Shown: in pieces, positions 4,853 to 60,263 of the stretch | How the letters are laid out: each line of letters opens with the position of its first letter | How positions within the stretch are numbered: the stretch's first letter is position 1 | IMG/VR virus record: IMGVR_UViG_3300045999_008996 | Coordinates: 62,001 to 126,000 of that record | Strand: one strand, 5' to 3' | Length of the DNA: 64,000 nt | Program-made: the position numbers and the translations under genes | The notes under the pieces: generated by a model | Databases searched by the model: none | What the model was told of the DNA's origin: nothing | Seen by the model: only the letters and a program-made list of their open reading frames with translations

Positions 4853-5064
4853 CTTTTGAATACCTCAGAATAGTATGGGTCTCTGCCTGATAGATTATAT
4901 GGGTCAAACCCTGGTCGAGTCATAATCCATTCATCTTCCATTTGCATATAACCCCATGAAAGTTCTTCAAAAAATGCAAGTCTATCAATATTATCTTCTA
5001 ATTGCAAACGAAAGTCAATGCAGTTTCTCCAAGACCAGAGGGCATTTTCAATCCACTGTTTCAT
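4849..5064 (-). CDS. Hypothetical protein
   Basis: ORF track, start MKQWIENALW. Confidence 0.65.
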   Translation of the reverse strand: MKQWIENALWSWRNCIDFRLQLEDNIDRLAFFEELSWGYMQMEDEWIMTRPGFDPYNLSGRDPYYSEVFKR

Positions 5065-5236
5065 CTGAGTAATTAACATAGAGATTGTCCCCACCAATGT
5101 TTAGATGAAAAATTTGACCATTGTTGAGATAGATTCCCAACCACACAGCACGACCTTCCTCCATTACCTCATAATGAAAAAGTTTTACATTCTCTAAAAT
5201 TATTTCGTCTGGATTCTTTATAAATTTTGAGGACAT
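5048..5236 (-). CDS. Hypothetical protein
   Basis: ORF track; first gene after promoter motif copy 1. Confidence 0.65.
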   Translation of the reverse strand: MSSKFIKNPDEIILENVKLFHYEVMEEGRAVWLGIYLNNGQIFHLNIGGDNLYVNYSDETVD

Positions 5237-5251
5237 CAAGGTTTTCTCAAT

Positions 5252-6166
5252 TCATAAGTGTATTATACCAGAGAGGGCACCCGATTTCAAGTTCCCCTGT
5301 GCCAGTTTTTCAACTGCCACAATGTCCTTATGTCTTTTATATTTTCCTATGTAAATCCTATAGATAGAACTTTGGTCATAACCATTTTCTTTTGACCAAT
5401 TACTTAATCCACATTGAGTAATAATTTTTCCATCAGCAAAAGTAATTTTCCAATAGTTTGATTTATGATGGTTTTTTCCAATTTTTATTTTATTCTTTTT
5501 TCCTCTTCCCAAAACCCAACCTTCTCCAGGACATTTTTTGGAAAATTTGTTATTTCCATTTTCATCATTCCACCAATACTTACCTGTATTTGATTCACTT
5601 TGTTTTCTTTTTGTTTTTTCAGAATGTGATTTGCCATAAAGTGGATGATTTTCTTTTGCCATTTTACCTTTAAGAGATTCACTTATTTTTTTTCTGTGTT
5701 CTTCTGAAAGTGGTTTTCCATAAAGTATGCTATTCTCTCCTTTATGTGCATTACTTTGTTTTCTTTTGGTTTCTTCGCTATGTTTTCTTCCTAAATTATT
5801 TTCTTTTATTTTTTGTCTATGCTCTGCCGAAAGAATTTTGCCCGTATGTGCTATTCTCAATTTTTCTCTTGTTTCTTCACTTCTAATACTACCAGAAAGA
5901 CCCTCACCACCATCAGTTTTATTTCTCAAAATACCAGTTCCTAAATCTTTCCTACCAAACACGGCAATCATATACTTCTCGTGCTTAAATGCTTCTTCCT
6001 CTGTTAGGTTTTGTTTTAGAAGTATTATTCGGGATTTATCTTTTGGTGGATAAACTTCACCTCTTCCTTTTCTATATACTCTATTATCTTTACCTTTACC
6101 TATGTAATAAGGAGTTCTATCCTCTCGCAAATATGCATAGGTATAAAATCTGTTAGGATTTACCAT
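5252..6166 (-). CDS. Free-standing GIY-YIG-type homing endonuclease with NUMOD3 repeats
   Basis: FYTYAYLREDRTPYYIGKG...R...E..MI...LRNKTDGGEG; HSEETKRK-type NUMOD3 repeats; start taken as MVNPNR, after the late promoter. Confidence 0.85.
   Translation of the reverse strand: MVNPNRFYTYAYLREDRTPYYIGKGKDNRVYRKGRGEVYPPKDKSRIILLKQNLTEEEAFKHEKYMIAVFGRKDLGTGILRNKTDGGEGLSGSIRSEETREKLRIAHTGKILSAEHRQKIKENNLGRKHSEETKRKQSNAHKGENSILYGKPLSEEHRKKISESLKGKMAKENHPLYGKSHSEKTKRKQSESNTGKYWWNDENGNNKFSKKCPGEGWVLGRGKKNKIKIGKNHHKSNYWKITFADGKIITQCGLSNWSKENGYDQSSIYRIYIGKYKRHKDIVAVEKLAQGNLKSGALSGIIHL
5262..5320 (-). promoter_or_regulatory. Repeated early promoter/stem-loop motif, copy 1
   Basis: TTGAAA(5285-5290)-17-TATAAT(5262-5267) with conserved plus-strand GTGCCAGTT box at 5299-5307. 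Confidence 0.7.
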
Positions 6167-6193
6167 TTCTACTCTTAAATTGGTTCGCAATAC

Positions 6194-6201
6194 TATTTAT
6201 A
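6194..6201 (-). promoter_or_regulatory. T4-type late promoter TATAAATA for the GIY-YIG gene
   Basis: Exact T4 gp55 consensus about 28 nt upstream of ATG. Confidence 0.8.
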
Positions 6202-6202
6202 C

Positions 6203-6260
6203 AAGAAAAGGAGCATTTCTGCTCCTCTCCCACCTTAAAGATGCGAACCAATTAAGGTAT
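6203..6260 (-). ncRNA. Putative antisense sRNA / RNA switch upstream of the GIY-YIG endonuclease
   Basis: ATAAATA at 6264-6270; 8-bp stem (6231-6238/6252-6259) around a segment complementary to leader 6178-6189; terminator aggagca-GAAA-tgctcct-UUUC. Confidence 0.5.
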
Positions 6261-6274
6261 TATTATTTATGTAA

Positions 6275-6571
6275 TTATTTTAAAATATCATCAACAGAAA
6301 CATAATCATAATCATCAATACAAAGTTTGAATCTTACAAAATCTAAAAAGTCCAATTCATCACACTCTGGAATATAATATTCTCCATCACCATCTCTATG
6401 AGTAAAATTAGCAAGATAATCCTCAAATACTACCATAATGGCAAGGGCACGAGAATGATCATGTTCTGTGATGGTTTTATGTGGGTGTGCCACAATTTTG
6501 GTGATACACTCAAAGAGTTCTTCACGGGTGTAAGAGAATGCTTTTGCTTCTTGGTTGAGTGTATAAGTCAT
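6275..6571 (-). CDS. Hypothetical protein
   Basis: ORF track. Confidence 0.7.
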   Translation of the reverse strand: MTYTLNQEAKAFSYTREELFECITKIVAHPHKTITEHDHSRALAIMVVFEDYLANFTHRDGDGEYYIPECDELDFLDFVRFKLCIDDYDYVSVDDILK

Positions 6572-6810
6572 TTCAATCTTTCAAATACATTACGAATATG
6601 AGATACTGAAAGATAAAACTCTCTGGTGTTTTGTCCTCCCAATACGATTGCGTTGAGTTCTTCAAGTGCTTCGTTGATGAGTTCTTGTCGTTCTGCCACA
6701 TTCATAACTTTCTGATAATCTTCTTCAGATACTTTAGCAACAATTACTTCATTTGTTGCCTCTCGTTCGGAAGCAATCTCTAGCATTTCTTCAAGTGTTG
6801 GGTCAGTCAT
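6568..6810 (-). CDS. Hypothetical protein
   Basis: ORF track, start MTDPTLEE. Confidence 0.7.
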   Translation of the reverse strand: MTDPTLEEMLEIASEREATNEVIVAKVSEEDYQKVMNVAERQELINEALEELNAIVLGGQNTREFYLSVSHIRNVFERLK

Positions 6811-7018
6811 TTTTTGCATCAAGTGTTTGCTTTACAATTCTGGCGGACTTTTGTGCTTTTGATTTCCATTCTTCAAGTTTTTCAATTCTATCACACAACT
6901 CGGTGATAATACCAATCAGACAATCATAATCAATATGCTCAATATCTTCACCATATTCTGGGTCATTATAGACATAGTAATTCAGTTCTTTCTTGAAGTT
7001 TCGGTCAGTCATAATCAA
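6803..7018 (-). CDS. Hypothetical protein
   Basis: ORF track. Confidence 0.65.
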   Translation of the reverse strand: MIMTDRNFKKELNYYVYNDPEYGEDIEHIDYDCLIGIITELCDRIEKLEEWKSKAQKSARIVKQTLDAKND

Positions 7019-7197
7019 TAGTTCTCATCAACATATAGTTCTGCCTCATCATCTTTTCCTTTATCATACATTACTTTGGCAAACTTCACAAAGGCATCAG
7101 GTTTTCCAGCAAACTCAGTCCATCCACAACCATCTTCTTCACACCATTCTTCGGTAAAGTATTCTTTTACCATTTGGAGGATTTCTTCAGTAGTCAT
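7015..7197 (-). CDS. Hypothetical protein, likely paralog of 7356..7574
   Basis: MT.E.I.Q....Y..E.W...DA..KFA+V+Y..G shared with 7356..7574. Confidence 0.65.
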   Translation of the reverse strand: MTTEEILQMVKEYFTEEWCEEDGCGWTEFAGKPDAFVKFAKVMYDKGKDDEAELYVDENY

Positions 7198-7363
7198 TTA
7201 GAATACCAAGAGCATAAAGTTGTCGTTCAATTCTCTCACTTGGAGTTCCAGTAAAAGCACCAACAAGTTCGGGATTGAGAGTATCAAGTTTCTGTGCGAT
7301 GTTCCAGCACTTATCTACTTCATCTTGATAGTGATTTAGAAGTTCCGTTAGAGGTTCAGTCAT
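7187..7363 (-). CDS. Hypothetical protein (58 aa)
   Basis: Manual: MTEPLTELLNHYQDEVDKCW...; fills the gap. Confidence 0.6.
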   Translation of the reverse strand: MTEPLTELLNHYQDEVDKCWNIAQKLDTLNPELVGAFTGTPSERIERQLYALGILNDY

Positions 7364-7574
7364 CATCAGAACTCCAAGTATTCATTTCGGTGCTTACATT
7401 ATTACTTTCCCAACCTTCATCATAACCCACTTTGAAACCTTCTGTGTAGATTACTCGGGCAAACTTCAAGAGTGCATCTTCTTCTAAAGGTTGCCATACA
7501 GCATCACCAATATCACCAGACCACAATTCTCTCAAATATGAGGAAGCAATTTGAATAATTTGTTCGTCAGTCAT
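7356..7574 (-). CDS. Hypothetical protein
   Basis: ORF track, start MTDEQIIQ. Confidence 0.65.
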   Translation of the reverse strand: MTDEQIIQIASSYLRELWSGDIGDAVWQPLEEDALLKFARVIYTEGFKVGYDEGWESNNVSTEMNTWSSDDD

Positions 7575-7812
7575 CGTATTCAGTAATAAAAGCAAATGCT
7601 AAACAAAACCTTCGTTGTTGAAAATCTACACTCATAAGAGAATTACCAAAGAAAGAAAACAAGAGGTTGATACCACCAGCAGAATGAATTATTTTACCGG
7701 GAGTTTCACAATTCACCCAAAGTAATGATTTGTTTTTGATGATACCAAACTGCCAGGTGTGAGATACTTCACCATCCTGATAAGTTTGTTTGGAGTGTTC
7801 GTAGATTTTCAT
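7567..7812 (-). CDS. Hypothetical beta-rich protein
   Basis: ORF track. Confidence 0.65.
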   Translation of the reverse strand: MKIYEHSKQTYQDGEVSHTWQFGIIKNKSLLWVNCETPGKIIHSAGGINLLFSFFGNSLMSVDFQQRRFCLAFAFITEYDD

Positions 7813-8006
7813 TTTTCAAGAACAAACAGAGTGTCAGAAATCATTTGTTTGGTGAAGTAAATTTCACCTTTATCAGTTACGAAAGAAAAGTATTTGAGGT
7901 CAGAAACTTTTCCCAAAAACTCTCCAATCTCCGCATATTTCTTTTCATCATATTCATTTTCAACACCTTCAAAGACACCGTATTTTGTGTGTGCGATGAT
8001 TTTCAT
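7809..8006 (-). CDS. Hypothetical protein
   Basis: ORF track, start MKIIAHTK after an AAGGA RBS. Confidence 0.7.
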   Translation of the reverse strand: MKIIAHTKYGVFEGVENEYDEKKYAEIGEFLGKVSDLKYFSFVTDKGEIYFTKQMISDTLFVLEK

Positions 8007-8030
8007 TGGAGTTCCTTTGTGTATGAAGTC

Positions 8031-8090
8031 ATTATACGACAAAACCACCGACCACAGGAGGGTCAGTGTGCCAGTTCATCAAGTGTACAC
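8031..8090 (-). promoter_or_regulatory. Repeated early promoter/stem-loop motif, copy 2
   Basis: TATAAT 8031-8036; plus-strand GTGCCAGTT 8068-8076 and AAGTGTACAC 8081-8090. Confidence 0.65.
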
Positions 8091-8390
8091 CTGAACCTCA
8101 AAGGTGTATGATTTTCTAAAATGTTCCATATTCATATGCATACTCACCACTTTTGCATCACCTTTTTGAACTTTACCAGCAACATCCAAAAAAGTATCTT
8201 CTGTTGGTTCATAAGATATGAAGGCTTTTGTAGGGTCTACTGCTGTAATACCAGTATTTGAAGTTGCGACCGATAAAGTAGTTACACCAGATACATTCCA
8301 TTCTGGTGGCAATTCAATTTTTTCTTCTACTACTGGTTCTTCTTTCTTTCCGTAAAGTTCTTCGTATTTTGCGATTAAAGGATTAGTCAT
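8079..8390 (-). CDS. Hypothetical protein
   Basis: ORF track. Confidence 0.7.
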   Translation of the reverse strand: MTNPLIAKYEELYGKKEEPVVEEKIELPPEWNVSGVTTLSVATSNTGITAVDPTKAFISYEPTEDTFLDVAGKVQKGDAKVVSMHMNMEHFRKSYTFEVQVYT

Positions 8391-8620
8391 TATACCATAT
8401 CCTCAAAGTCTCTGGGTTCTACATAAGGGTCTTCACAACCAGTATAAGCATACATTTTATTATTCATCTTATACCAGTCGTGATTGAGAGCATACCAGAA
8501 GGTCATGCAATACCAATCATAAAATCCAAGTCCTTCATCATAAGAACCAAATACATTAGTTTCTTCTGGAACTCTCATCCAGATTTTCCAATAATCAAAG
8601 ATTAGTTTAGTGAGTTTCAT
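8390..8620 (-). CDS. Hypothetical aromatic-rich protein
   Basis: ORF track, start MKLTKLIF after GAGGAGG. Confidence 0.65.
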   Translation of the reverse strand: MKLTKLIFDYWKIWMRVPEETNVFGSYDEGLGFYDWYCMTFWYALNHDWYKMNNKMYAYTGCEDPYVEPRDFEDMV

Positions 8621-8782
8621 AATACATATCCTCCTCATATTTTACATAATCACTTTGAAGATAGTTGAAGAACTCTCCATCATCGTGGGTCATAGTATAG
8701 CACCATTCATCAAAACATTCACCAAACCACCACCAACCAGATTGGAGTTTCTCAAAGACATTCATAGGACGATTGTATTTCA

Positions 8783-8968
8783 TCAGTCATACCTAATCTT
8801 CTTTGGATTGTTTTTGGTTCCACATACAGGACACTTTATACCATCCATCACCAGTTGTCTATCACAAGAATTACACCAAAAGAAACCATACTTTGCCTGT
8901 TTGGATTTCTCACGATTTCTTGGTGTATAGTCATCATCTATCTTTCTCATCCACCCAATAAAATCCAA
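8783..8968 (-). CDS. Small Zn-ribbon protein
   Basis: CNSC...CPVC. Confidence 0.6.
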   Translation of the reverse strand: MDFIGWMRKIDDDYTPRNREKSKQAKYGFFWCNSCDRQLVMDGIKCPVCGTKNNPKKIRYD

Positions 8969-9578
8969 GACAAGTTTTCATAAAGAACCGAACAATCATA
9001 CTCGGTTTATCAGGCATATAATACCTCAAATATCGTTGATTACCAATTGTATAATAACCTTTATGATTACTTCCCTGTTTGATTACAAAAGAGGTTTCAG
9101 TATAAGAACCAGCACTCAATCCAGTTGTTGTATAAGCAAGTTTTAGGTAAGGAAACTGTCCGTGCTCCTTTGCATATTCAAAGTTCTCAATAATTCTATC
9201 AAACTTTATGCTGTATAACTTTTCTGAAAGATATTTGGATTGATGGAACTTGTTTTTAGTATTCTCTATCTGGGCATCAATCTTCTCATCAAACTCTTGT
9301 GTGATTTCATCCAGAGTTTTAGGTTTCTCTGGGATAATAAGGAGATGTTTGACTTTATCAAAGTTTTCATTAGTTTCAGATACTTTCAATCCCATAGCAC
9401 AAAATACTGCCTCTACATCTTTGATAGAAGTTAGTTTAGTAGTATCTACATCATACCACTTACTTCCAATATGTAAAGTTCCTACTGGTGGAATATAAGT
9501 GTTGTTTTGAACGCTTGCTGGGTAAGTATCCAATACTGGTTGTCCTATGTTTTGTTCGGTTGGTTTCCAATCAGTCAT
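8934..9578 (-). CDS. Hypothetical protein
   Basis: ORF track, start MTDWKPTE. Confidence 0.75.
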   Translation of the reverse strand: MTDWKPTEQNIGQPVLDTYPASVQNNTYIPPVGTLHIGSKWYDVDTTKLTSIKDVEAVFCAMGLKVSETNENFDKVKHLLIIPEKPKTLDEITQEFDEKIDAQIENTKNKFHQSKYLSEKLYSIKFDRIIENFEYAKEHGQFPYLKLAYTTTGLSAGSYTETSFVIKQGSNHKGYYTIGNQRYLRYYMPDKPSMIVRFFMKTCLGFYWVDEKDR

Positions 9579-9707
9579 AATTTTCAAGTTCCTCACACAA
9601 TTCTAACACATTATCATAAATCACAGGGAAATAGTCCAAAGAGTAAGAAGTGCTACCTCCATAAACATTATCAAACTCTACAAAAAGTTCTTGAAGTTTA
9701 TAATCAG

Positions 9708-9884
9708 TCATTTTGCCTCCATAGCATTAATCACAGCATCACGAGCACTTTTACCTTTTGCTCTATTCATAGGAAATCCAGTATTTATAAACACCCAATC
9801 ACTCTCACCATTCATTTTGAGAGAATGTGGTTTGAATTGATTGAGTAGAAACTCAAGGATTTCTGTGTCTGATGGTTCAGTCAT
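9708..9884 (-). CDS. Hypothetical protein (58 aa)
   Basis: Manual: MTEPSDTEILEFL...SARDAVINAMEAK; ATGA overlaps. Confidence 0.6.
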   Translation of the reverse strand: MTEPSDTEILEFLLNQFKPHSLKMNGESDWVFINTGFPMNRAKGKSARDAVINAMEAK

Positions 9885-10057
9885 CGTATTCCAGTATCAA
9901 AGAGGTTTTTCAGTTCTTCATAAAGTGGTCGTAGTTCAACATATCTTCCATCATGTTTTAGATCACCAGTATCTTTTGTATATAATAGAAGTGTATAGAG
10001 TTGTCGTGCTTGGTCTTCTTGAAGTTCTACGACATAAGATTTTTTGATTTCAATCAT
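9881..10057 (-). CDS. Hypothetical protein (58 aa)
   Basis: Manual: MIEIKKSYVVELQEDQARQLY...; ATGA overlaps. Confidence 0.6.
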   Translation of the reverse strand: MIEIKKSYVVELQEDQARQLYTLLLYTKDTGDLKHDGRYVELRPLYEELKNLFDTGIR

Positions 10058-10338
10058 TCTACATCCCCCAAATCCTTTTCGTCAATCAAAATCACAGTAT
10101 CAAAGGGGATTTCACGACCAAGACCACAATACTTACCAAGTTGATACATAAGGCTCCAAAGTTGGAACTTCACATAACCATCTTCATCTTCCTTTGGAGG
10201 TTCATAAGGATACTTATCAAGCATTCCACCAGCACCCTGAGCACTCCAAAAGTCATTATGGTCTTGTTCCAGCATTTTTTTGCCGTGTTCTGTGAGTTTC
10301 ACACGAACATTATAGTTGATGTTGAAGGATTTAGTCAT
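10054..10338 (-). CDS. Hypothetical phage protein
   Basis: NINYNVRVKLTEHG...DEDGYVKFQLWSLM. Confidence 0.7.
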   Translation of the reverse strand: MTKSFNINYNVRVKLTEHGKKMLEQDHNDFWSAQGAGGMLDKYPYEPPKEDEDGYVKFQLWSLMYQLGKYCGLGREIPFDTVILIDEKDLGDVE

Positions 10339-10583
10339 AATTCAAGAAGTTTCTCAAGTTGTAGTTTTTGTTGGACGAGTTCAACACTTTTCACTCTTTC
10401 GTCATAAAATCTTTTCATATTCTCACGGATTTCTCTTTCTTCTGAGGTCAAATCCATTTGATATTGTAATTTCAAAAGAAGAATAGTTTCCAAATCTTTG
10501 AGGACACTTACTGGAATATCCAAAAACTCATCATAAGTCATTTTCCTATCCAAATAACAATGGACATAATCAACCAAATCCAT
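10335..10583 (-). CDS. Hypothetical protein
   Basis: ORF track. Confidence 0.6.
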   Translation of the reverse strand: MDLVDYVHCYLDRKMTYDEFLDIPVSVLKDLETILLLKLQYQMDLTSEEREIRENMKRFYDERVKSVELVQQKLQLEKLLEL

Positions 10584-10674
10584 CCCGCAGTATATAAAAA
10601 TGTTTTTTTACCTTCAACAATAAGACCACCTACACAATAAATCTGTGAGATAATCAGGAAGACATCACTTTTTG

Positions 10675-10872
10675 TCATTTGGAGTTCTCCAACTTGTAGA
10701 AATCATATTTGGTTTTACAAGCAGTTGGTTGTTTTATACAATACGAAATTGTTTTTTCTTGTGTTTCTTTTTGTGCTATTGATGTTCCATTAGTAAATCC
10801 CAGAGTAAAAAATAAACCAGCAGTAGCCATAAGAAGAATAAGAACTGGTGGGATGTCATTATCATCGTTCAT
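10675..10872 (-). CDS. Small single-pass membrane protein, tandem paralog A
   Basis: Hydrophobic N-terminus, YCIKQPTACKTKYDFYKLE. Confidence 0.75.
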   Translation of the reverse strand: MNDDNDIPPVLILLMATAGLFFTLGFTNGTSIAQKETQEKTISYCIKQPTACKTKYDFYKLENSK

Positions 10873-11054
10873 TTCTGGTTCTCCAACTTGTAGAAATCAT
10901 ACTTGGTTTTACAAGCAGTTGGTTTTTCTATGCAGTATGTAATTGTTTCTCTTCGTGTTGTTGATTCTGCGCCATTAAACCCCAACATAAAAAACAAACC
11001 AGCAATAGCAACAAAAAGAATAAGAAATGGGAAGAAATTATCGTCGTTGCTCAT
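10869..11054 (-). CDS. Small single-pass membrane protein, tandem paralog B
   Basis: Hydrophobic N-terminus, YCIEKPTACKTKYDFYKLE. Confidence 0.75.
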   Translation of the reverse strand: MSNDDNFFPFLILFVAIAGLFFMLGFNGAESTTRRETITYCIEKPTACKTKYDFYKLENQK

Positions 11055-11266
11055 TTCCGTGCCTCCCAATACTTACCTTCCATACCACATTCATAATACT
11101 TTCTCGCATGATCACAATACTTACCATTAGATCTTCCCGTCACAACATTTCCAGTCAAAGCAGGATGAAGGCATAAGTCAAATGTGTCTCCAAATCCAGT
11201 AATGCGAGCATTCCAATCTTTCTTATAAAAACGGCAGTCGCAACAGAGACGAATAGGTTCAGTCAT
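11051..11266 (-). CDS. Cys-rich small protein
   Basis: CCDCRFY...FDLC...YC...CG. Confidence 0.7.
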   Translation of the reverse strand: MTEPIRLCCDCRFYKKDWNARITGFGDTFDLCLHPALTGNVVTGRSNGKYCDHARKYYECGMEGKYWEARK

Positions 11267-11289
11267 TTGAAGTTTTTATCTATGAAAGT

Positions 11290-11347
11290 ATCATACCAGA
11301 AAAGGCACCTGTTTTCAAGTGCCCCTGTTCCAGTTCGTCAAGTGTCC
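11290..11347 (-). promoter_or_regulatory. Repeated early promoter/stem-loop motif, copy 3
   Basis: TTGAAA-17-TATGAT; ggcac/gtgcc stem; GTTCCAGTT 11327-11335, AAGTGTCC 11340-11347. Confidence 0.7.
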
Positions 11348-11628
11348 AACATCTTACGAATTTTATCACCAATCAATTCAAGAATACTTTTTTGTCTTGG
11401 AGACCAAGCACTATAATTCATACAAATGTGATTGTATAGTCGTGGAAACTGATTAACAAGATTACAATAATCACCCCCTGATTTCAAACATTTATCAAAT
11501 CCAGCGCCATTAGAACTTTTACAACAATGAATACAGTTACGGCAGTTGATAGCAAGACCAGAAGCAGAATCAACTTGAGTATCAATCAGTCCTTCCAGTT
11601 GTGCCCGTTTTTGTTCAAGATTGTTCAT
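11338..11628 (-). CDS. Cys-rich small protein
   Basis: CRNCIHCC...FDKC...YC...C. Confidence 0.65.
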   Translation of the reverse strand: MNNLEQKRAQLEGLIDTQVDSASGLAINCRNCIHCCKSSNGAGFDKCLKSGGDYCNLVNQFPRLYNHICMNYSAWSPRQKSILELIGDKIRKMLDT

Positions 11629-11843
11629 AAGTTCTCCAATTCATCACATACATCAAGTATAGCACGGGCATCAAGCACCATATCTTCCACACCTTCCTCT
11701 TCACAACACTGATAGTATTGGAGTTGTTCTACTACCTCACGGAGAGCATTAGCAATCTCATATCCATCAACATTACAGGGATGTGGTTCATTCTTCCAGA
11801 ATGCTTCAAATACTTTTTGTGCTACTTCTTTTTTGTTAGTCAT
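11625..11843 (-). CDS. Hypothetical protein
   Basis: ORF track, start MTNKKEVA. Confidence 0.65.
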   Translation of the reverse strand: MTNKKEVAQKVFEAFWKNEPHPCNVDGYEIANALREVVEQLQYYQCCEEEGVEDMVLDARAILDVCDELENL

Positions 11844-11963
11844 ACCAACACATCCAAGTAATACCAAAAAATGAACCAAGCATAAATCCTACAGCAACAT
11901 TAGAAGGAACTAAAAAGGAAATAGCAATAATAACTGCCCAGAGTAGAAAGATTTTCATTTTAG

Positions 11964-12158
11964 TCAAATCGGATAAGGTTGTTGTGGGTCTTTATACCAC
12001 ACTTTCTTGTACAATAACCACGGTTCATCACTATTGATATTATGAACCATTTGTGCCATCCAGTGGAAACCACAAGAATCTACGGAATCCAAATAATGAA
12101 TGCCTGTTTTAGGACAGATAGTTCTTGTGACAGATACAAACTTAATTTTCTCAACCAT
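11964..12158 (-). CDS. Hypothetical protein
   Basis: ORF track, start MVEKIKFV after GGAG. Confidence 0.65.
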   Translation of the reverse strand: MVEKIKFVSVTRTICPKTGIHYLDSVDSCGFHWMAQMVHNINSDEPWLLYKKVWYKDPQQPYPI

Positions 12159-12255
12159 AATCAAACTCCGTCTGGTAGATTTCCTGTTACACAAAGAATA
12201 AAAGCAACAATAAAGAAAATCCCAAGTCCTACTGGAAGTGAGTAATCTGGGTCAG

Positions 12256-12519
12256 TCATTTGTGTTCTTTATACCAACTAAGGTCTCTTGGTCGTGTAGT
12301 AATTACATCCAAATAAAGTTGAAATCGTTTGTATCGGATATAAAATCCAAGCAAAAACCCCGAACTGATACACAAAGAAAATTCTGGGAGGATAGAATCG
12401 GAACCAAAATCATCCCACTGGACTGTAATATCAACTAGAGCAAACTTTTGGAATCTAAGGACTTGGAAAAACCATTCTTTTCCAAAATCTTCATAAGTTT
12501 CATAATCAAAGAGTTTCAT
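12256..12519 (-). CDS. Hypothetical beta-rich protein, paralog of 14020..14298
   Basis: EDFGKEW...LP...G.LL motif shared with 14020..14298. Confidence 0.7.
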   Translation of the reverse strand: MKLFDYETYEDFGKEWFFQVLRFQKFALVDITVQWDDFGSDSILPEFSLCISSGFLLGFYIRYKRFQLYLDVITTRPRDLSWYKEHK

Positions 12520-12793
12520 ACTTTGCCTCAACTTCTTTCACACGCTCCATGAAACTATCCTCTCCGTGGTCTCCACTATACAAATAGTCCACGTGCCTCA
12601 TAATTTCTGCCATCTTACGCATCTTGAGAAGTTGTTTCCTCAAATAATTGATAGTTTCAGGTGAGAAGTTGGGAGGAGCATACTCATACTCATCTGGTTT
12701 GTTGTTGTTTTGGATTTCTACTTCCAACTCATCAGCAAACTGTGCTACCTTGTAGTAATCATAACCGCAATCGCCAAAATGTCCGCCTGAAAT
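12506..12793 (-). CDS. Hypothetical protein, probable AUU start
   Basis: AGGAGG (12801-12806), 7-nt spacer, ATT-TCA-GGC-GGA-CAT in frame with track ORF 12506..12727; in-frame TAG at 12809-12811. Confidence 0.65.
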   Translation of the reverse strand: MSGGHFGDCGYDYYKVAQFADELEVEIQNNNKPDEYEYAPPNFSPETINYLRKQLLKMRKMAEIMRHVDYLYSGDHGEDSFMERVKEVEAKYETL

Positions 12794-12820
12794 AGGATTT
12801 CCTCCTTTCTATCTGAACAT

Positions 12821-12877
12821 ATTATACCAGAGAAACACTTACTTCCAAGTGCCCTTGTGCCAGTTTCATAAGTGGTC
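12821..12877 (-). promoter_or_regulatory. Repeated early promoter/stem-loop motif, copy 4
   Basis: TTGGAA-16-TATAAT; GTGCCAGTT 12857-12865, AAGTGGTC 12870-12877. Confidence 0.7.
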
Positions 12878-13623
12878 TAATTTAGTTTTCTTCCTAATAC
12901 CCATCCATCAGCAGGACATTCTTCACTTCTTTTACATTCTATTCCATTATTCCACCATTTTTTAGTTTTCATACTTTCACTTATTTTTCTTTTACATTCT
13001 TCAGATAATTCTTTTCCATAATTGGGATTATTTTTTCCAAGTTTAGATATTTTTATCTTGGATTTTGTTTCTTCAGAATGTTTTTTTCCTGTATTTGATT
13101 TGCGAAGTTTTTCTTTGTGTTCTTCTGTCAACGAAGGTTTATTTCTTCCTGTATGAGAAATGGAAATTTTTCTTTTATGCTCTTCAGAAAGAGATTTGCC
13201 GTAGTTGTGATGTTTATCTCCTTTTTGACTTTCGCTAAAATATCTTATCAACTCTTCAGGATGTTTTTTGCCATAAAATGGATTATTTTTTCCAGATAAT
13301 GATTTTCTCCACCTATTTTTTAGATTTTCATACAAAGTAGAATTATAATATCTATTGTGTTTTCCATCTTGAGATGCTCTCATCATCCAAAAAGCATAAG
13401 TCATTTTTCTGGATTTTTCATTATCAATACCATATCTTTTTATAAATGCCTTTTCTAATAATGCGTGAGCAATATAATGCTCCTTCCCAGTAAGAACAAC
13501 AACTCTATTATTCTTTCCAAAAATACTTATGGGAAATGTATGGTGTTTTTCTGTATAACCTTCAGGAGGAGTTCTGTTCTCTGCTTTCCTTATAAGGTTA
13601 CAATATATCTTTAGATAGTTCAT
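12877..13623 (-). CDS. Free-standing HNH-type (MobE-like) homing endonuclease with NUMOD3 repeats
   Basis: YTEKHHTFP...VVLTGKEHYIAHALL; NPFYGKKH and HSEETKSKI NUMOD3 motifs. Confidence 0.85.
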   Translation of the reverse strand: MNYLKIYCNLIRKAENRTPPEGYTEKHHTFPISIFGKNNRVVVLTGKEHYIAHALLEKAFIKRYGIDNEKSRKMTYAFWMMRASQDGKHNRYYNSTLYENLKNRWRKSLSGKNNPFYGKKHPEELIRYFSESQKGDKHHNYGKSLSEEHKRKISISHTGRNKPSLTEEHKEKLRKSNTGKKHSEETKSKIKISKLGKNNPNYGKELSEECKRKISESMKTKKWWNNGIECKRSEECPADGWVLGRKLN

Positions 13624-13648
13624 TTCTATTCTATTGAAACCGCATTAG

Positions 13649-13656
13649 TATTTATA
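13649..13656 (-). promoter_or_regulatory. T4-type late promoter TATAAATA for the HNH gene
   Basis: Exact consensus about 26 nt upstream of ATG. Confidence 0.8.
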
Positions 13657-13659
13657 ATA

Positions 13660-13719
13660 GAAAAGGTGCCCAAAAGAGCACCCAATCTTATCTGTAGAGA
13701 TTGCGGTTTCAACAGATAT
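13660..13719 (-). ncRNA. Putative antisense sRNA / RNA switch upstream of the HNH endonuclease
   Basis: ATAAATA 13723-13729; stem tatctgt/acagata around a segment complementary to leader 13630-13644; terminator ggtgctc-UUUU-gggcacc-UUUU. Confidence 0.5.
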
Positions 13720-13728
13720 TGTTATTTA

Positions 13729-14016
13729 TCATGGTTGTGTCTCCGTTGTTACTGGGGGTGGGGATGGTGCTACTGGAGGTACTATAACAGGTTGTGGGAT
13801 TGGTTGGACAGGAGGTTGTGCCACTTCTACAACTGGTTTCTGAGATTCTTCAATTTGTTTTTCAAGTTCGCTAATTTTTTCTTCAAATGCATTAATACTT
13901 GGTGTTTCTACTGGTGAAGGATTTTTACTTTCTTCAGCAAGTTTCCAACCAGTAATACCAGCACCAAAAATACTAGCAAGTGCAGCAAAAACAGAAATAG
14001 TCTTTGAAAAACTCAT
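13729..14016 (-). CDS. Membrane-anchored/secreted protein with coiled coil and Pro-rich tail
   Basis: Hydrophobic N-terminus, PPVQPIPQPVIVPPVAPSPPP. Confidence 0.7.
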   Translation of the reverse strand: MSFSKTISVFAALASIFGAGITGWKLAEESKNPSPVETPSINAFEEKISELEKQIEESQKPVVEVAQPPVQPIPQPVIVPPVAPSPPPVTTETQP

Positions 14017-14019
14017 AGT

Positions 14020-14298
14020 TTAGTCTTTAGTAATTTCGTTTGGTTGAATGTAAAAAAGTTCATCTCGCCAGTTTCGACCAGCAATATCAAAAGTAAATCC
14101 TATTCGCCCAATAGAAAAAAGGACTGATAAGAGTCTACCATACCCCATAGAGATTTGGAGATAAGGTAACTCAATCCATTTTCCATATTCACCATAATCA
14201 ATCGCAAATTGAAGGAGTGAATATCGTCTTCCAGTACAAAGAGTCACATAATACTCTTTACCATAATCTTCTCTTACACCAACTTGAAAGAACTTCAT
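14020..14298 (-). CDS. Hypothetical beta-rich protein
   Basis: Start MKFFQV; paralog of 12256..12519. Confidence 0.7.
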   Translation of the reverse strand: MKFFQVGVREDYGKEYYVTLCTGRRYSLLQFAIDYGEYGKWIELPYLQISMGYGRLLSVLFSIGRIGFTFDIAGRNWRDELFYIQPNEITKD

Positions 14299-14756
14299 TC
14301 GGATGCTCTCCATTGTTTTCTCATTTTAACATACTCTGGATCATAGGCAACCTTGTCGCGTACTTCTTTAAATATGCTCGCAGACTGTGCTTTAATGGAA
14401 ACCAATGCATCTGCTTCTTGGGGTAATACGGCACCAGACGAATCGTATTTTTTTCCGTCCTTATGATTCGCATATCGTCGGCTGCGAGTGAATCCCATCT
14501 CAAGGAATTTCCGCGCCATATCCATTCCAATGAAATCCTTCTGTCGTTTGTAATCACAATACATTTCGTATATCTTATGAGAAGATTTACGAGCAGTAAC
14601 CACATCCTTGAACCTCCAATGAGCACAGATCTCATCAGTATATGGTCGAACAAGGAGCACTCCCTGTTCACCACGACCAATACGATAAAGTTTTCTGATA
14701 TTTATGTCAGTGAAGTTCAAGTTTTTATAATCTAAAGAGTAATCAAACTCCTTCAT
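14295..14756 (-). CDS. DUF4385 family protein
   Basis: YRIGRGEQGVLLVRPY...DFIGMDMARKFLEMGFTRSRRYANHK. Confidence 0.8.
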   Translation of the reverse strand: MKEFDYSLDYKNLNFTDINIRKLYRIGRGEQGVLLVRPYTDEICAHWRFKDVVTARKSSHKIYEMYCDYKRQKDFIGMDMARKFLEMGFTRSRRYANHKDGKKYDSSGAVLPQEADALVSIKAQSASIFKEVRDKVAYDPEYVKMRKQWRASE

Positions 14757-15321
14757 TAACTTTACCATGAAGAGGACAATCACCATTTACCCACTTACGA
14801 CCGTCTGGCATTTCTTCATTATCCATTACAGGACACTTACAACCTTTTTCAACTGCTTCAGTAGAACCAGGAACAAGACCTTTCCACCCTTTATAATATT
14901 CCTCCACAGTCATTGCTTCCATTTCTTCTTCAGTATAATTTGGATTATCAGGTTGCTGACAGCGTGACAGTTTTGCTTTCAGATCATAAATCTCATCTTC
15001 CAACTTCCGAAACTCTTTTGCATAATCTTCTGCCATTTTCAGTTCAAACTCTTCCGCAATCTTACACATATCTTCTTCACTACGCATATCATTAAATGCA
15101 AGTGAACAAGCACCATTCATAATACCGATTTCATTATGTCCCATTGTGCGGGCAACAGTTCCAAAGAAACGGAAGAGTTGAATGGTGTTAATGTCTTCAC
15201 AGGGAATTTCAAAAGTATAATGCTCCTCAGGAAGAGTTCCGTCGTCATACATTCCAGAACCTCCAAGATTAGGGGTCCATTCGGCGTCAAAATGCACACG
15301 AAGTTTTGCTTTGTAAGTCAT
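14743..15321 (-). CDS. Hypothetical protein with C-terminal GCxCP..DN..CPLH metal-binding module
   Basis: Start MTYKAKL; PGSTEAVEKGCKCPVMDN...WVNGDCPLHG. Confidence 0.7.
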   Translation of the reverse strand: MTYKAKLRVHFDAEWTPNLGGSGMYDDGTLPEEHYTFEIPCEDINTIQLFRFFGTVARTMGHNEIGIMNGACSLAFNDMRSEEDMCKIAEEFELKMAEDYAKEFRKLEDEIYDLKAKLSRCQQPDNPNYTEEEMEAMTVEEYYKGWKGLVPGSTEAVEKGCKCPVMDNEEMPDGRKWVNGDCPLHGKVNEGV

Positions 15322-59806: not shown

Positions 59807-59818
59807 TATTTATAAATA
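59807..59818. promoter_or_regulatory. Palindromic back-to-back late promoters TATTTATAAATA
   Basis: TATAAATA on both strands between divergent genes 59780(-) and 59844(+). Confidence 0.75.
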
Positions 59819-59843: not shown

Positions 59844-60263
59844 ATGTCTTCGCAAGTATTGAGTGGTGCTTCCAACCCTTCTTATACAAATAATACTGGT
59901 CAGAATGTGAGAATTGTGATTAACTTCATGAGAAATGTAACTGCAATTAACTGGGCAGGAGTTAGTGCAACTGCATCTAGTTGTACTATTGGTAGGAATC
60001 TTGCTTATACACAATCAGTTACTGAAGGTACCACTGTAGATTCTACAATAGTTACTTCAAAAAGTGCATTTATATATAGTGCTGGTTTTGGTCCGAATGA
60101 TATAGTAAACACAATAAAAATACCAAGTAGTACGGTGGTATCCTCCGGAAATAATATGGGCGGAAATAACTCTCTTCCAACAGAATTGATGCTTGCTTCA
60201 GGTCAAACTTTCAGTGCTATCTGCAGTGCATATAATATAGTAGTCATCCCCGAAGCAGGTTAA
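59844..60263 (+). CDS. Small virion-type protein, the only plus-strand gene
   Basis: SYTNNTGQNVRIVINF...LPTELMLASGQTF; AGGA RBS; own late promoter. Confidence 0.8.
   Translation: MSSQVLSGASNPSYTNNTGQNVRIVINFMRNVTAINWAGVSATASSCTIGRNLAYTQSVTEGTTVDSTIVTSKSAFIYSAGFGPNDIVNTIKIPSSTVVSSGNNMGGNNSLPTELMLASGQTFSAICSAYNIVVIPEAG

What the first reader, a model, noticed from the sequence alone, without database searches (positions are those of the whole stretch)
13624..13729. Same cassette, different sequence, upstream of the unrelated HNH endonuclease
Seen: ATAAATA (13723-13729); hairpin tatctgt/acagata enclosing UGAAACCGCAAUCUCU; terminator ggtgctc-UUUU-gggcacc-UUUU; TATAAATA (13649-13656); leader UGCGGUUUCAAUAGAAUAGAA-AUG. 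Segment 13702-13716 pairs with leader 13630-13644 over 15 nt with one G-U. Spacing matches copy 1: promoter to promoter 74 vs 70 nt, promoter to ATG 26 vs 28 nt. Both share a CGCA loop / UGCG leader seed and a UAGAAAUG start. The rest of the pairing differs, so each RNA matches only its own gene. Inference: a portable, orthogonal RNA control module that travels with phage homing endonucleases of different folds. This is the best candidate for an undescribed system in the window.
Basis: partly seen in the sequence, partly recalled or inferred. Interest (0 to 1): 0.88.

Follow-up and report, generated by a model that had tools for sequence, protein, structure and literature searches.

The report
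Portable RNA lock on homing-endonuclease genes
A ~110-base control cassette sits in front of selfish homing-endonuclease genes in T4-like cyanophages: a terminator, a late promoter and a leader that base-pairs with an upstream "anti-leader". It is a widespread, elaborated version of a known phage trick for keeping such genes untranslated until late infection, and it may also make a small RNA, which is unproven.

Summary
The 15-nt anti-leader/leader pairing is far beyond chance (fold z = -5.8). The same architecture recurs in about 200 distinct cassettes in IMG/VR contigs and in the cultured Synechococcus phage S-SRM01. It always precedes homing-endonuclease-type genes of at least four to six unrelated families. 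Pairing is kept by massive compensatory change (13/13 pairs; 93.5% paired against 69% in shuffles). G-U pairs without A-C pairs show that the pairing acts in RNA of the coding strand.

The core mechanism is already known. As in T4 I-TevI, segB, gene e and Aeh1 mobE, RNA that reads in from upstream hides the ribosome-binding site. Only RNA started at the internal TATAAATA late promoter can be translated. Dassa et al. 2009 already noted such hairpins before marine metagenomic endonuclease genes.

Three features appear new:
- an intrinsic terminator inside the loop;
- a strictly conserved second late-promoter motif (N[A/C]TAAATA) at the cassette's 5' edge, with the same spacer and a purine at +6 as the main promoter;
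- placement of that motif so that transcription would start on the first base of a stem-loop that displays the anti-leader.

These predict a ~57-nt terminated RNA that could also act in trans. That layer is plausible (about 0.4) but untested.

Verdict: a new variant of a known kind, of moderate interest.

The parts
13723..13730 (-). P1: upstream late-promoter-type motif gATAAATA. It forms the 5' edge of the cassette and overlaps the stop codons of the upstream ORF.
   Evidence: TAAATA is present at a fixed distance in nearly all standard cassettes. It is the same motif class as the late promoters of this phage's structural genes.
13689..13718 (-). H1: local stem-loop (7-bp stem, 16-nt loop) that displays the anti-leader. 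The predicted P1 start site (13717) falls on its first bases.
13702..13716 (-). Anti-leader (5' arm), complementary to the leader.
13657..13683 (-). Intrinsic terminator: 8-bp G+C-rich stem, 4-nt loop and a T-tract that abuts P2.
   Evidence: helix 3 covaries.
13649..13656 (-). P2: canonical T4-type late promoter TATAAATA. The predicted start site is G13643.
   Evidence: (TATAAATA in 183 of 193 cassettes).
13630..13644 (-). Leader (3' arm). It pairs with the anti-leader and runs from the predicted 5' end of the late mRNA to 6 nt before the AUG, covering the ribosome-binding region.
12877..13623 (-). Mob-type HNH homing endonuclease with NUMOD3 repeats (248 aa).
12821..12848 (-). Sigma-70-like promoter with an extended -10 (TTGGAA-16-TGgTATAAT) just after the endonuclease stop. 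It is followed by a strong Shine-Dalgarno sequence for the next gene.
   Evidence: This is not a general cassette feature (13 of 162).
6264..6271 (-). Copy 1 P1: cATAAATA.
6232..6258 (-). Copy 1 H1 stem-loop (ACCTTAA / TTAAGGT). The anti-leader is 6242-6259.
6204..6231 (-). Copy 1 intrinsic terminator.
6194..6201 (-). Copy 1 P2: TATAAATA. The predicted start site is G6188.
6169..6189 (-). Copy 1 leader (3' arm). It pairs to within 2 nt of the AUG and includes the AAGAG Shine-Dalgarno-like element.
5252..6166 (-). GIY-YIG-like homing endonuclease with NUMOD3 repeats (304 aa). The catalytic domain is identified only by motif and weak matches.

Best explanation
The region is a self-contained expression-control cassette that moves together with free-standing homing-endonuclease genes in T4-like cyanophages.

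Order of parts: late-promoter motif P1, stem-loop H1 carrying an anti-leader, intrinsic terminator, canonical late promoter P2, leader, AUG.

Working model:
1. The terminator stops most transcription entering from the upstream (probably early) genes.
2. Any RNA that does read through carries both arms. It folds into a 15-20-bp long-range helix that buries the whole leader up to 0-6 nt before the AUG, so the endonuclease is not translated.
3. RNA started at P2 begins on the first bases of the 3' arm and lacks the anti-leader. It has an open ribosome-binding region and is the only translatable message. The nuclease is therefore made only late and at a modest level.
4. P1 is probably an active late promoter, with less confidence. 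It would then make a ~57-nt terminated RNA (H1 plus terminator). This RNA could pair with the P2 leader in trans, or polymerases stopping at the terminator next to P2 could occlude P2, further damping expression.

What is shown here: the anatomy, the RNA-level selected pairing, the portability and the exclusive link to endonuclease genes.

What is inferred: promoter activity, start sites, termination and the effect on translation. These rest on analogy with T4 I-TevI, gene e and Aeh1 mobE.
For: Anatomy and folding:
- Searches give the anatomy and the folds (z about -5.7).
- In 171 of 171 read-through RNAs the minimum-energy fold uses the long-range helix.
- The P2-started 5' ends are nearly unstructured (-3.8 and -7.1 kcal/mol).

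Selected pairing:
- 193-205 distinct cassettes were found.
- In a set chosen only by terminator-plus-P2 sequence, 98 of 99 have a cognate duplex of -17 kcal/mol or better, against 14% of non-cognate pairs.
- RNAalifold on an unfitted MAFFT alignment picks this helix, with 13 of 13 pairs showing compensatory change.
- 93.5% of cells are paired against 69.3% in shuffles. The covariation score is 0.709 against 0.255 (0 of 500 shuffles reach it), and slid controls give at most 0.117.
- The gap-free seed holds 39 G-U pairs and no A-C pairs, so the pairing acts in RNA of the coding strand.

Promoters:
- P2 is TATAAATA in 183 of 193 cassettes, and pairing starts 4 nt after it.
- T4-type late promoters occupy -13 to -6 (PMC2988020).
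- NATAAATA is the cyanomyovirus late consensus (PMC2984593).
- In the window the motif shows an 18:3 strand bias and sits before structural ORFs.

Precedent for the mechanism: PMC2988022, PMC3014915 and PMC2677866.

Link to endonuclease genes: 192 of 205 downstream ORFs fall into four endonuclease-type families. The rest are other GIY-YIG/HNH-like genes or decayed copies.

Support for P1:
- TAAATA lies at the module's 5' edge.
- Its extended logo is the same as P2's, with a purine at +6.
- H1 begins at the predicted start site in 153 of 173 cassettes, and one base later in the other 20.
- The P1-to-P2 segment folds as exactly two hairpins in 173 of 173.
- The NCTAAATA variants match the Aeh1 late consensus.
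Against: - No transcript, start-site or translation data exist for any of these cassettes.
- The Shine-Dalgarno-like elements are weak (AGAG/AGAA).
- With a good terminator in place the cis lock looks partly redundant.
- A purely cis model does not explain why P1 and H1 are conserved.
- H1 is only marginally stable (mean -5.7 kcal/mol, mean z = -1.64).
- Cassettes sharing a genome are no more orthogonal than random pairs. This gives no extra support to trans action.
- In 81 of 129 cases the upstream ORF stops within -3 to +4 of the P1 motif. Part of P1's conservation could therefore reflect a stop-codon or junction role.
Confidence: 0.78

Rival explanations
1. P1 drives a dedicated ~57-nt small RNA (H1 plus terminator). 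The anti-leader, exposed in the H1 loop, pairs in trans with the 5' end of the P2 mRNA and blocks its ribosome-binding site. Each endonuclease gene would then carry its own private sRNA repressor.
For: - P1 is TAAATA in nearly all standard cassettes. It has the same spacer and the same purine at +6 as P2.
- P1 marks the module's 5' edge.
- H1 starts on the predicted start site.
- The two-hairpin, sRNA-like fold appears in 173 of 173 cassettes.
- The loop-located seed helix is 99.8% paired.
- Complementarity begins at the predicted +1 of the mRNA.
- Cognate cofold gain is -12 kcal/mol, against 0 and -4.6 for the cross pairs.
- Both motif variants match recognised T4-family late consensus sequences.
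Against: - No RNA has been detected.
- Both promoters would fire at the same time, so the purpose of making activator and repressor transcripts together is unclear.
- The cis helix forms anyway and has direct experimental precedent.
- No trans-acting sRNA has been characterised in T4-type phages (PMC3014915).
- There is no excess orthogonality within genomes.
- About a quarter of cassettes extend the pairing upstream of the predicted P2 start. That extension matters only in cis.
Confidence: 0.4
2. The mechanism is cis only. The upstream TAAATA is not a working promoter. It would be a stop-codon cap or insertion-junction signature, or a resident late promoter captured at the insertion site. H1 would merely help fold or stabilise the 3' end of the upstream mRNA.
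For: - The upstream ORF stops inside or next to the motif in 81 of 129 cases. The same holds in S-SRM01.
- The window's native late promoters also overlap upstream stop codons.
- H1 is weak.
- All published precedents act in cis.
Against: - A stop cap would tolerate TAG or TGA, yet TAAATA is essentially invariant.
- The AT-rich 5-nt spacer and the purine at +6 copy P2.
- The fixed 5-nt distance to the base of H1 is not explained.
- The cassette sits among small, probably early genes, where resident late promoters are rare.
Confidence: 0.3
3. The long-range helix is mainly a double-strand-specific RNase (RNase III-type) processing site. Cleavage would separate upstream mRNA from the endonuclease mRNA.
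For: The helix is a conserved 15-20-bp duplex enclosing a structured loop. This geometry resembles phage intercistronic processing sites (from general knowledge of T7).
Against: - The helices are short and often bulged.
- No conserved internal-loop signature was seen.
- The helix covers exactly the ribosome-binding region and ends at the P2 start, which fits translational masking better.
Confidence: 0.08
4. The inverted repeat acts at the DNA level. It would be an operator for the endonuclease or another protein (as I-TevI autorepresses at its late promoter), or a cruciform.
For: - The repeat flanks P2.
- I-TevI autorepression at an operator overlapping its late promoter is known (PMC2988022).
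Against: - There are 39 G-U pairs and no A-C pairs in the seed, which points to single-strand, strand-specific RNA pairing.
- The arm sequences differ almost completely between cassettes that precede homologous endonucleases, and are shared between cassettes that precede unrelated ones. They therefore do not track a protein's DNA specificity.
Confidence: 0.03
5. The short RNA is a guide or cofactor bound by the endonuclease, in the manner of omega RNA or HEARO.
For: None beyond its position next to an HNH-type gene.
Against: - The same RNA scaffold serves at least four unrelated protein families that carry their own NUMOD3-type DNA-binding modules.
- There is no Rfam match, including to HEARO-type families.
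- The variable part of the RNA is complementary to its own leader, not to a target site.
Confidence: 0.02

Closest known systems
RBS-sequestering hairpins with an internal late promoter in T-even phages: I-TevI, I-TevII, I-TevIII, segB, Aeh1 mobE, and genes e, soc and 49 (PMC2988022; PMC3014915).
   Same: - An upstream strand pairs with the Shine-Dalgarno/AUG region on long early or middle transcripts.
- A TATAAATA late promoter is placed so that late transcripts lack the 5' strand and are translated.
- The arrangement is used on homing-endonuclease genes, including a Mob-type HNH gene related to the one in this window.
   Different: - Here the loop contains a conserved intrinsic terminator.
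- A second late-promoter motif sits upstream of the 5' strand, so RNA from it would carry the anti-leader.
- The 5' strand is also presented in its own stem-loop.
- The whole unit is a mobile module shared by several endonuclease families.
5'-UTR hairpins of free-standing endonuclease genes in 'fractured gene' loci from marine metagenomes (Dassa et al. 2009, PMC2677866).
   Same: - Hairpins precede GIY-YIG and other free-standing endonuclease genes.
- Ten of them include TATAAATA.
[quoted passage not shown]
- They were interpreted as mobE-like translational control. They are probably the same cassette class.
   Different: - Going by the main text (the supplement was not available), that paper does not describe the upstream second promoter motif, the embedded terminator or the covariation across hundreds of copies.
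- I could not compare the sequences directly.
Stem-loop antisense RNAs that block translation of an adjacent or overlapping gene, such as Sok/hok, CopA/CopT and pMV158 RNAII/repB. This comparison rests on general knowledge; PMC4485353 was listed but not read.
   Same: - A short RNA with its own promoter, a recognition loop and a Rho-independent terminator.
- Extended complementarity to the translation-initiation region of one specific target.
   Different: - Those RNAs are transcribed from the opposite strand of their target. Here the putative RNA is co-directional and encoded upstream, so complementarity comes from an inverted repeat and the same pairing can form in cis.
- Expression of the RNA is unproven.
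CfrI antisense RNA of cyanophage S-PM2, linking psbA and the endonuclease gene F-CphI (cited in PMC2984593).
   Same: A non-coding RNA associated with a homing-endonuclease gene in a T4-like cyanophage.
   Different: CfrI is a ~225-nt true antisense transcript from the opposite strand overlapping the coding regions. It has no terminator/late-promoter cassette and no leader masking.
PeSL (promoter-early stem-loop) mobile regulatory cassettes of T4-type phages (Arbiol et al. 2010). This is recalled from memory and was not checked here.
   Same: Short promoter-plus-stem-loop modules that recur between genes in hyperplastic regions and appear to move with, or mediate shuffling of, accessory genes.
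   Different: PeSLs carry early sigma-70-type promoters. They are not described as pairing with a downstream leader or as specific to endonuclease genes.
Short terminated transcripts from phage late promoters: lambda 6S RNA and StxS from PR' (PMC7547250 was listed; only its abstract was seen).
   Same: A late promoter fires into a terminator a few dozen nucleotides downstream and yields a small RNA that can have regulatory activity.
   Different: Those depend on Q antitermination and act on host targets. Here no antiterminator is evident, and the complementary target is the adjacent gene's own leader.

Membership tests
T4-type late-promoter/RBS-sequestering leader hairpin (I-TevI, e, soc, 49 and mobE class) | The translation-initiation region is base-paired with an upstream segment in transcripts that start upstream. 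| tested here: met
   The minimum-energy folds give z = -5.8 and -5.6. The long-range helix wins in 171 of 171 read-through RNAs. Pairing reaches 0-6 nt from the AUG. Covariation is strong.
T4-type late-promoter/RBS-sequestering leader hairpin (I-TevI, e, soc, 49 and mobE class) | A T4-type late promoter (TATAAATA) is positioned so that late transcripts lack the 5' strand. | tested here: met
   TATAAATA lies between the arms in 183 of 193 cassettes. The predicted +1 falls on the first bases of the 3' arm. The promoter geometry comes from PMC2988020. The test is at sequence level only.
T4-type late-promoter/RBS-sequestering leader hairpin (I-TevI, e, soc, 49 and mobE class) | Translation is shown to be repressed on long transcripts and relieved on late transcripts. 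| not testable with these tools
   This needs reporter, toeprint or infection experiments.
T4-type late-promoter/RBS-sequestering leader hairpin (I-TevI, e, soc, 49 and mobE class) | The phage has the gp55-type late transcription system. | not tested
   The window looks like a T4-like cyanomyovirus. NATAAATA shows an 18:3 strand bias before structural ORFs, and the nearest relatives are in the Kyanoviridae. I did not search the contig for gp55, gp33 or gp45.
Trans-acting antisense small RNA with a dedicated target | The RNA has its own promoter and a defined 5' end. | tested here: inconclusive
   A late-promoter-type motif is conserved at a fixed distance, with a P2-like spacer and a purine at +6. 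There are no transcript data.
Trans-acting antisense small RNA with a dedicated target | A Rho-independent terminator defines a short RNA. | tested here: met
   The terminator scan hit 13683-13664. A terminator hairpin plus U-tract is present in 173 of 173 cassettes, and its stem covaries (helix 3). Its efficiency is unknown.
Trans-acting antisense small RNA with a dedicated target | The RNA has specific complementarity to the target's initiation region, with an accessible seed. | tested here: met
   Cognate duplexes average -23 kcal/mol against -12 for non-cognate pairs. The seed lies in the H1 loop in the predicted folds.
Trans-acting antisense small RNA with a dedicated target | The RNA accumulates and represses its target when supplied in trans. 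| not testable with these tools
   This needs Northern blots or dRNA-seq and trans-complementation assays.
Any curated Rfam family (including HNH-associated HEARO/omega-type RNAs) | A covariance-model match at or near the gathering score. | tested here: not met
   cmscan of 5000-15000 at E <= 5 gave only three sub-threshold chance hits elsewhere.
HNH (Mob-type) homing endonuclease, for the downstream gene | Sequence membership in the family. | tested here: met
   PHROG 655 'homing endonuclease' matches at 1e-35, and PHROG 12434 'HNH endonuclease' at 8e-06. There are three NUMOD3 repeats. Identity is 32-37% over more than 80% of the length to homing endonucleases of T4-like coliphages, one of them annotated as mobile endonuclease E. 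The Pfam HNH model itself did not hit.

The most novel reading that the evidence does not exclude
Each cassette would be a two-gene RNA circuit. An upstream late promoter makes a ~57-nt terminated anti-leader RNA that represses, in trans, the endonuclease mRNA made from the promoter 70 nt downstream.

This would be the first class of trans-acting regulatory small RNA in T4-type phages. It would be a private repressor that selfish endonuclease genes carry with them. Nature would already have diversified it into more than 100 mutually orthogonal RNA-RNA pairs on one scaffold.
Probability: 0.4. Interest if true: 0.75.

Novelty: new variant of a known kind. Interest (0 to 1): 0.55.

Why it matters
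The cassette shows how selfish nuclease genes can settle almost anywhere in a densely packed phage genome. They bring their own insulation (a terminator), timing (a late promoter) and translational lock. Sometimes they also bring a promoter and RBS for the gene they displace.

Three practical consequences follow:
- The cassette is a sharp annotation marker for the boundaries of homing-endonuclease genes in cyanophage metagenomes.
- It offers a natural library of more than 100 co-varying, mutually specific RNA pairs on one scaffold. This is useful for studying RNA-RNA specificity and for designing riboregulators.
- If the upstream promoter is active, it gives T4-type phages their first candidate trans-acting small RNA. 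The 2010 T4 review noted this gap (PMC3014915).

A cultured host-phage pair, S-SRM01 on Synechococcus sp. KCZYC6, carries the full cassette, so the question can be tested directly.

Tried and rejected
- **Rfam:** a scan of 5-15 kb found nothing relevant.
- **Empty site:** I looked for the site without the cassette through neighbours of the DUF4385 gene. Synteny is too poor in this hyperplastic region. Only the 3' junction at the start codon of the next gene could be read. The 5' edge was defined statistically instead.
- **Within-genome orthogonality:** I asked whether cassettes sharing a genome avoid cross-pairing, which would favour trans action. There was no difference (-10.3 against -10.1 kcal/mol, p = 0.64).
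- **3' sigma-70-like promoter:** I asked whether it is part of the module. It is present in only 13 of 162 cassettes, so it is a local feature.
- **Two further downstream protein families:** Pfam, PHROG, NCBIfam, PDB sequence search and hhalign gave nothing significant. The AlphaFold N-terminal domains had pLDDT below 50, so no fold search was run. They are called endonuclease-like only from their C-terminal repeat and DNA-binding architecture and their Tyr-rich N-terminal motifs.
- **Coliphage homologue:** the vB_EcoM_G8 endonuclease gene overlaps uvsW and has no cassette, so it was uninformative.
- **Literature:** I searched for cyanophage start-site maps or small RNAs near endonuclease genes. 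None were found. The Gibb and Edgell primary papers were not held, and neither was the Dassa supplement.
- **DNA operator or cruciform, and guide RNA:** both rejected (see rival explanations).
Full report
**What is there.** The window is part of a 222-kb IMG/VR contig from a T4-like cyanomyovirus. It is distantly related to freshwater Synechococcus phage S-SRM01, Kyanoviridae. Genes run on the - strand.

Reading 13730 to 13621 on that strand gives these elements in order:
- the TGA-TAA end of a 95-aa ORF, overlapped by gATAAATA (P1, 13730-13723);
- a 7-bp hairpin, H1 (13718-13712 / 13695-13689), with a 16-nt loop;
- an intrinsic terminator (13683-13664 plus T-tract), called independently;
- TATAAATA (P2, 13656-13649);
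- a 25-nt leader;
- the ATG (13623) of a 248-aa Mob-type HNH/NUMOD3 homing endonuclease.

13716-13702 pairs with 13644-13630 over 15 nt with one G-U. Copy 1 (6271-6164) has the same layout with different arm sequences, in front of a GIY-YIG-like/NUMOD3 gene.

**Is it more than chance?** RNA spanning both arms folds with the long-range helix enclosing the terminator and P2. z = -5.80 and -5.61, with 0 of 200 shuffles as stable. Cofolding of the putative short RNA with the P2-started 5' end gains -12.3 and -12.0 kcal/mol for the cognate pairs. The two cross pairs gain 0.0 and -4.6.

**Relatives.** Homologues of the two endonucleases in IMG/VR carry the same cassette upstream, with obviously matching arm changes.
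- A scan that required only an ATAAATA motif, an ORF and a leader/upstream duplex found 193 distinct cassettes with 125 distinct anti-leaders.
- A definition that required no ORF found 205.
- An independent pattern scan used only the terminator-P2 junction. Of its 99 unique cassettes, 98 have a cognate duplex of -17 kcal/mol or better, against 14% of non-cognate combinations.
- RNAalifold on a plain MAFFT alignment of 67 diverse cassettes chose the anti-leader/leader helix. All 13 pairs show compensatory double changes.
- Pair counting gave 93.5% paired against 69.3% in shuffles. The covariation score is 0.709 against 0.255 (0 of 500 shuffles reach it). Slid controls reach at most 0.117. The terminator stem also covaries.
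- In the gap-free seed there are 39 G-U pairs and no A-C pairs. Selection therefore acts on RNA of the coding strand, not on a DNA palindrome.

**Association with endonuclease genes.** Of the 205 cassettes, the downstream ORF is:
- of the window's GIY-like type in 100;
- of the Mob-HNH type in 44;
- of two further families without database matches in 28 and 20;
- another ORF of at least 60 aa in 7. By N-terminal motif alone, five of these look like canonical GIY-YIG genes. The other two are Cys-rich, and one of them is S-SRM01 gp066, annotated as an HNH endonuclease;
- a short or decayed ORF in 6, some of them truncated copies of the HNH type.

No cassette preceded any other kind of gene. The two unmatched families are called endonuclease-like only from their C-terminal repeat and DNA-binding architecture. 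Their N-terminal folds could not be modelled.

**Mechanism: the known core.** The pairing runs from 4 nt after P2 to 0-6 nt before the AUG, so it covers the ribosome-binding region. T4-type late promoters are an 8-bp box at -13 to -6 (PMC2988020). P2 transcripts should therefore begin on the first bases of the 3' arm and lack the anti-leader. Their 5' ends are nearly unstructured. In every read-through RNA tested (171 of 171) the minimum-energy fold uses the long-range helix rather than H1.

This is the logic established for T4 I-TevI/II/III, segB, e, soc and 49 and for Aeh1 mobE (PMC2988022; PMC3014915). Dassa et al. noted hairpins containing TATAAATA and two complementary motifs before metagenomic marine endonuclease genes (PMC2677866). 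The core of the finding is therefore a known kind of control, here shown to be a highly conserved, mobile module.

**What goes beyond the precedent.**
1. An intrinsic terminator sits inside the loop, with its T-tract abutting P2.
2. A second late-promoter-type motif lies at the cassette's 5' edge.
   - TAAATA lies 4-7 nt before the first paired base in 173 of 193 cassettes. Most of the apparent exceptions are scoring artefacts or a distinct 'type II' architecture.
   - Among 317 pairs of similar cassettes in different contexts, identity falls to background immediately 5' of this motif.
   - Its forms (NATAAATA, NCTAAATA) match the cyanomyovirus and Aeh1 late consensus sequences.
   - They also match the motifs that sit, with an 18:3 strand bias, before this phage's structural genes.
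   - Its downstream logo (A-T-A-A-T, then a purine at +6) mirrors that of P2.
3. H1 begins exactly at the predicted P1 start in 153 of 173 cassettes, and one base later in the other 20. Its basal pairs covary. The P1-to-P2 segment folds as exactly two hairpins in 173 of 173.

Together these predict a ~57-nt RNA with the anatomy of an antisense regulator.

**Weighing cis against trans.** The cis lock follows directly from the anatomy and has experimental precedent. I put it at about 0.8.

The trans layer explains P1, H1 and the terminator economically, but several points count against it:
- H1 is weak (mean -5.7 kcal/mol, mean z = -1.64).
- Cassettes sharing a genome are no more orthogonal than random pairs.
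- The upstream ORF stops within -3 to +4 of the P1 motif in 81 of 129 cases (also in S-SRM01). Some of the conservation could therefore be a stop-codon or junction role. However, TAG and TGA alternatives are never seen.
- No transcript data exist.

I put an active, functionally relevant short RNA at about 0.4.

**Rejected readings.** DNA operator or cruciform: the G-U asymmetry argues against it, and the arm sequences do not track the protein family. Guide or cofactor RNA: one scaffold serves unrelated proteins, there is no Rfam match, and the variable part is complementary to its own leader. An RNase III processing site remains a minor possibility.

**Verdict.** It is not a new kind of system, and trans action is unproven. 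It is a new variant of a known kind. A testable extra layer would be notable if real, because no trans-acting small RNA has been characterised in T4-type phages (PMC3014915). S-SRM01 carries the complete cassette before gp066 and offers a direct experimental route.

Noticed in passing
window 12740-12850 (-), compared with L285:5700-5800: The gene after the HNH endonuclease has lost the ATG that its homologue has in L285. In this window a strong AAGGAGG is followed 7 nt later by ATT, in frame with the conserved SGGHFGDCGYDYYK start. Upstream lies a sigma-70-like promoter with an extended -10, TTGGAA-16-TGgTATAAT (12848-12821). The endonuclease insertion seems to supply a promoter and RBS for its neighbour, possibly with a non-ATG start.
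   Followed up: partly
window 5255-5270 (-): The same CTCTGGTATAAT extended -10-like element lies inside the 3' end of the GIY-like ORF, just before the next gene. Across all cassettes only 13 of 162 endonuclease genes have TGnTATAAT near their stop.
   Followed up: partly
L022:260-410: This is a natural chimera. The leader is identical to that of the window's HNH cassette, but the anti-leader comes from another cassette. The cognate duplex is only -6.9 kcal/mol. It is a ready-made 'unlocked' variant, consistent with recombination inside the conserved terminator/P2 segment.
   Followed up: no
L018, L020, L037, L050, L090, L100, L178 (upstream of the matched genes): A second cassette architecture ('type II') exists. 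The anti-leader sits in the loop of a single long hairpin (GTGGGCAGCAAC ... GTTGCGTAAGTCCCAC) placed directly before TATAAATA. Some copies have a TAAATA 4-5 nt before that stem.
   Followed up: partly
L169 (14.4 kb): Five separate cassettes, each with its own distinct anti-leader/leader pair and endonuclease-type gene, lie within one 14-kb stretch. This is an unusually dense cluster of homing-endonuclease genes.
   Followed up: no
L158:1478-2236, L169:5185-6054 and relatives (alignments A2, A3): Two protein families always follow the cassette. Their N-termini are like MTSQSPRIYTYKITFEEVPYYYYG and MELKEYHYVYYSYEEYGRGY. Neither has a Pfam, PHROG, NCBIfam or PDB match. Their N-terminal domains could not be modelled (pLDDT below 50). 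Their C-terminal halves are repeated helical modules plus a small beta-beta-alpha-beta unit shared with the window's GIY-like protein. They are probably undescribed or very divergent homing-endonuclease catalytic domains.
   Followed up: partly
window 59807-59818: Two TATAAATA motifs overlap on opposite strands. They lie between the divergent ORFs 57078-59780(-) and 59844-60263(+). This looks like a compact bidirectional late promoter.
   Followed up: no
whole window: NATAAATA occurs 18 times on the - strand and 3 times on the + strand. NCTAAATA occurs 4 times against 1. Most - strand copies lie 10-50 nt before ORF starts, and several overlap the stop codon of the preceding gene. This is useful for annotating the phage's late transcription units.
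   Followed up: partly
L004, L005, L006 (about 2880-2910): In these loci the cassette's upstream TAAATA motif directly abuts what looks like the 3' end of a tRNA gene (GGTTCGAATCC...). Endonuclease cassettes are evidently also inserted next to tRNA genes. No tRNA scan was run.
   Followed up: no
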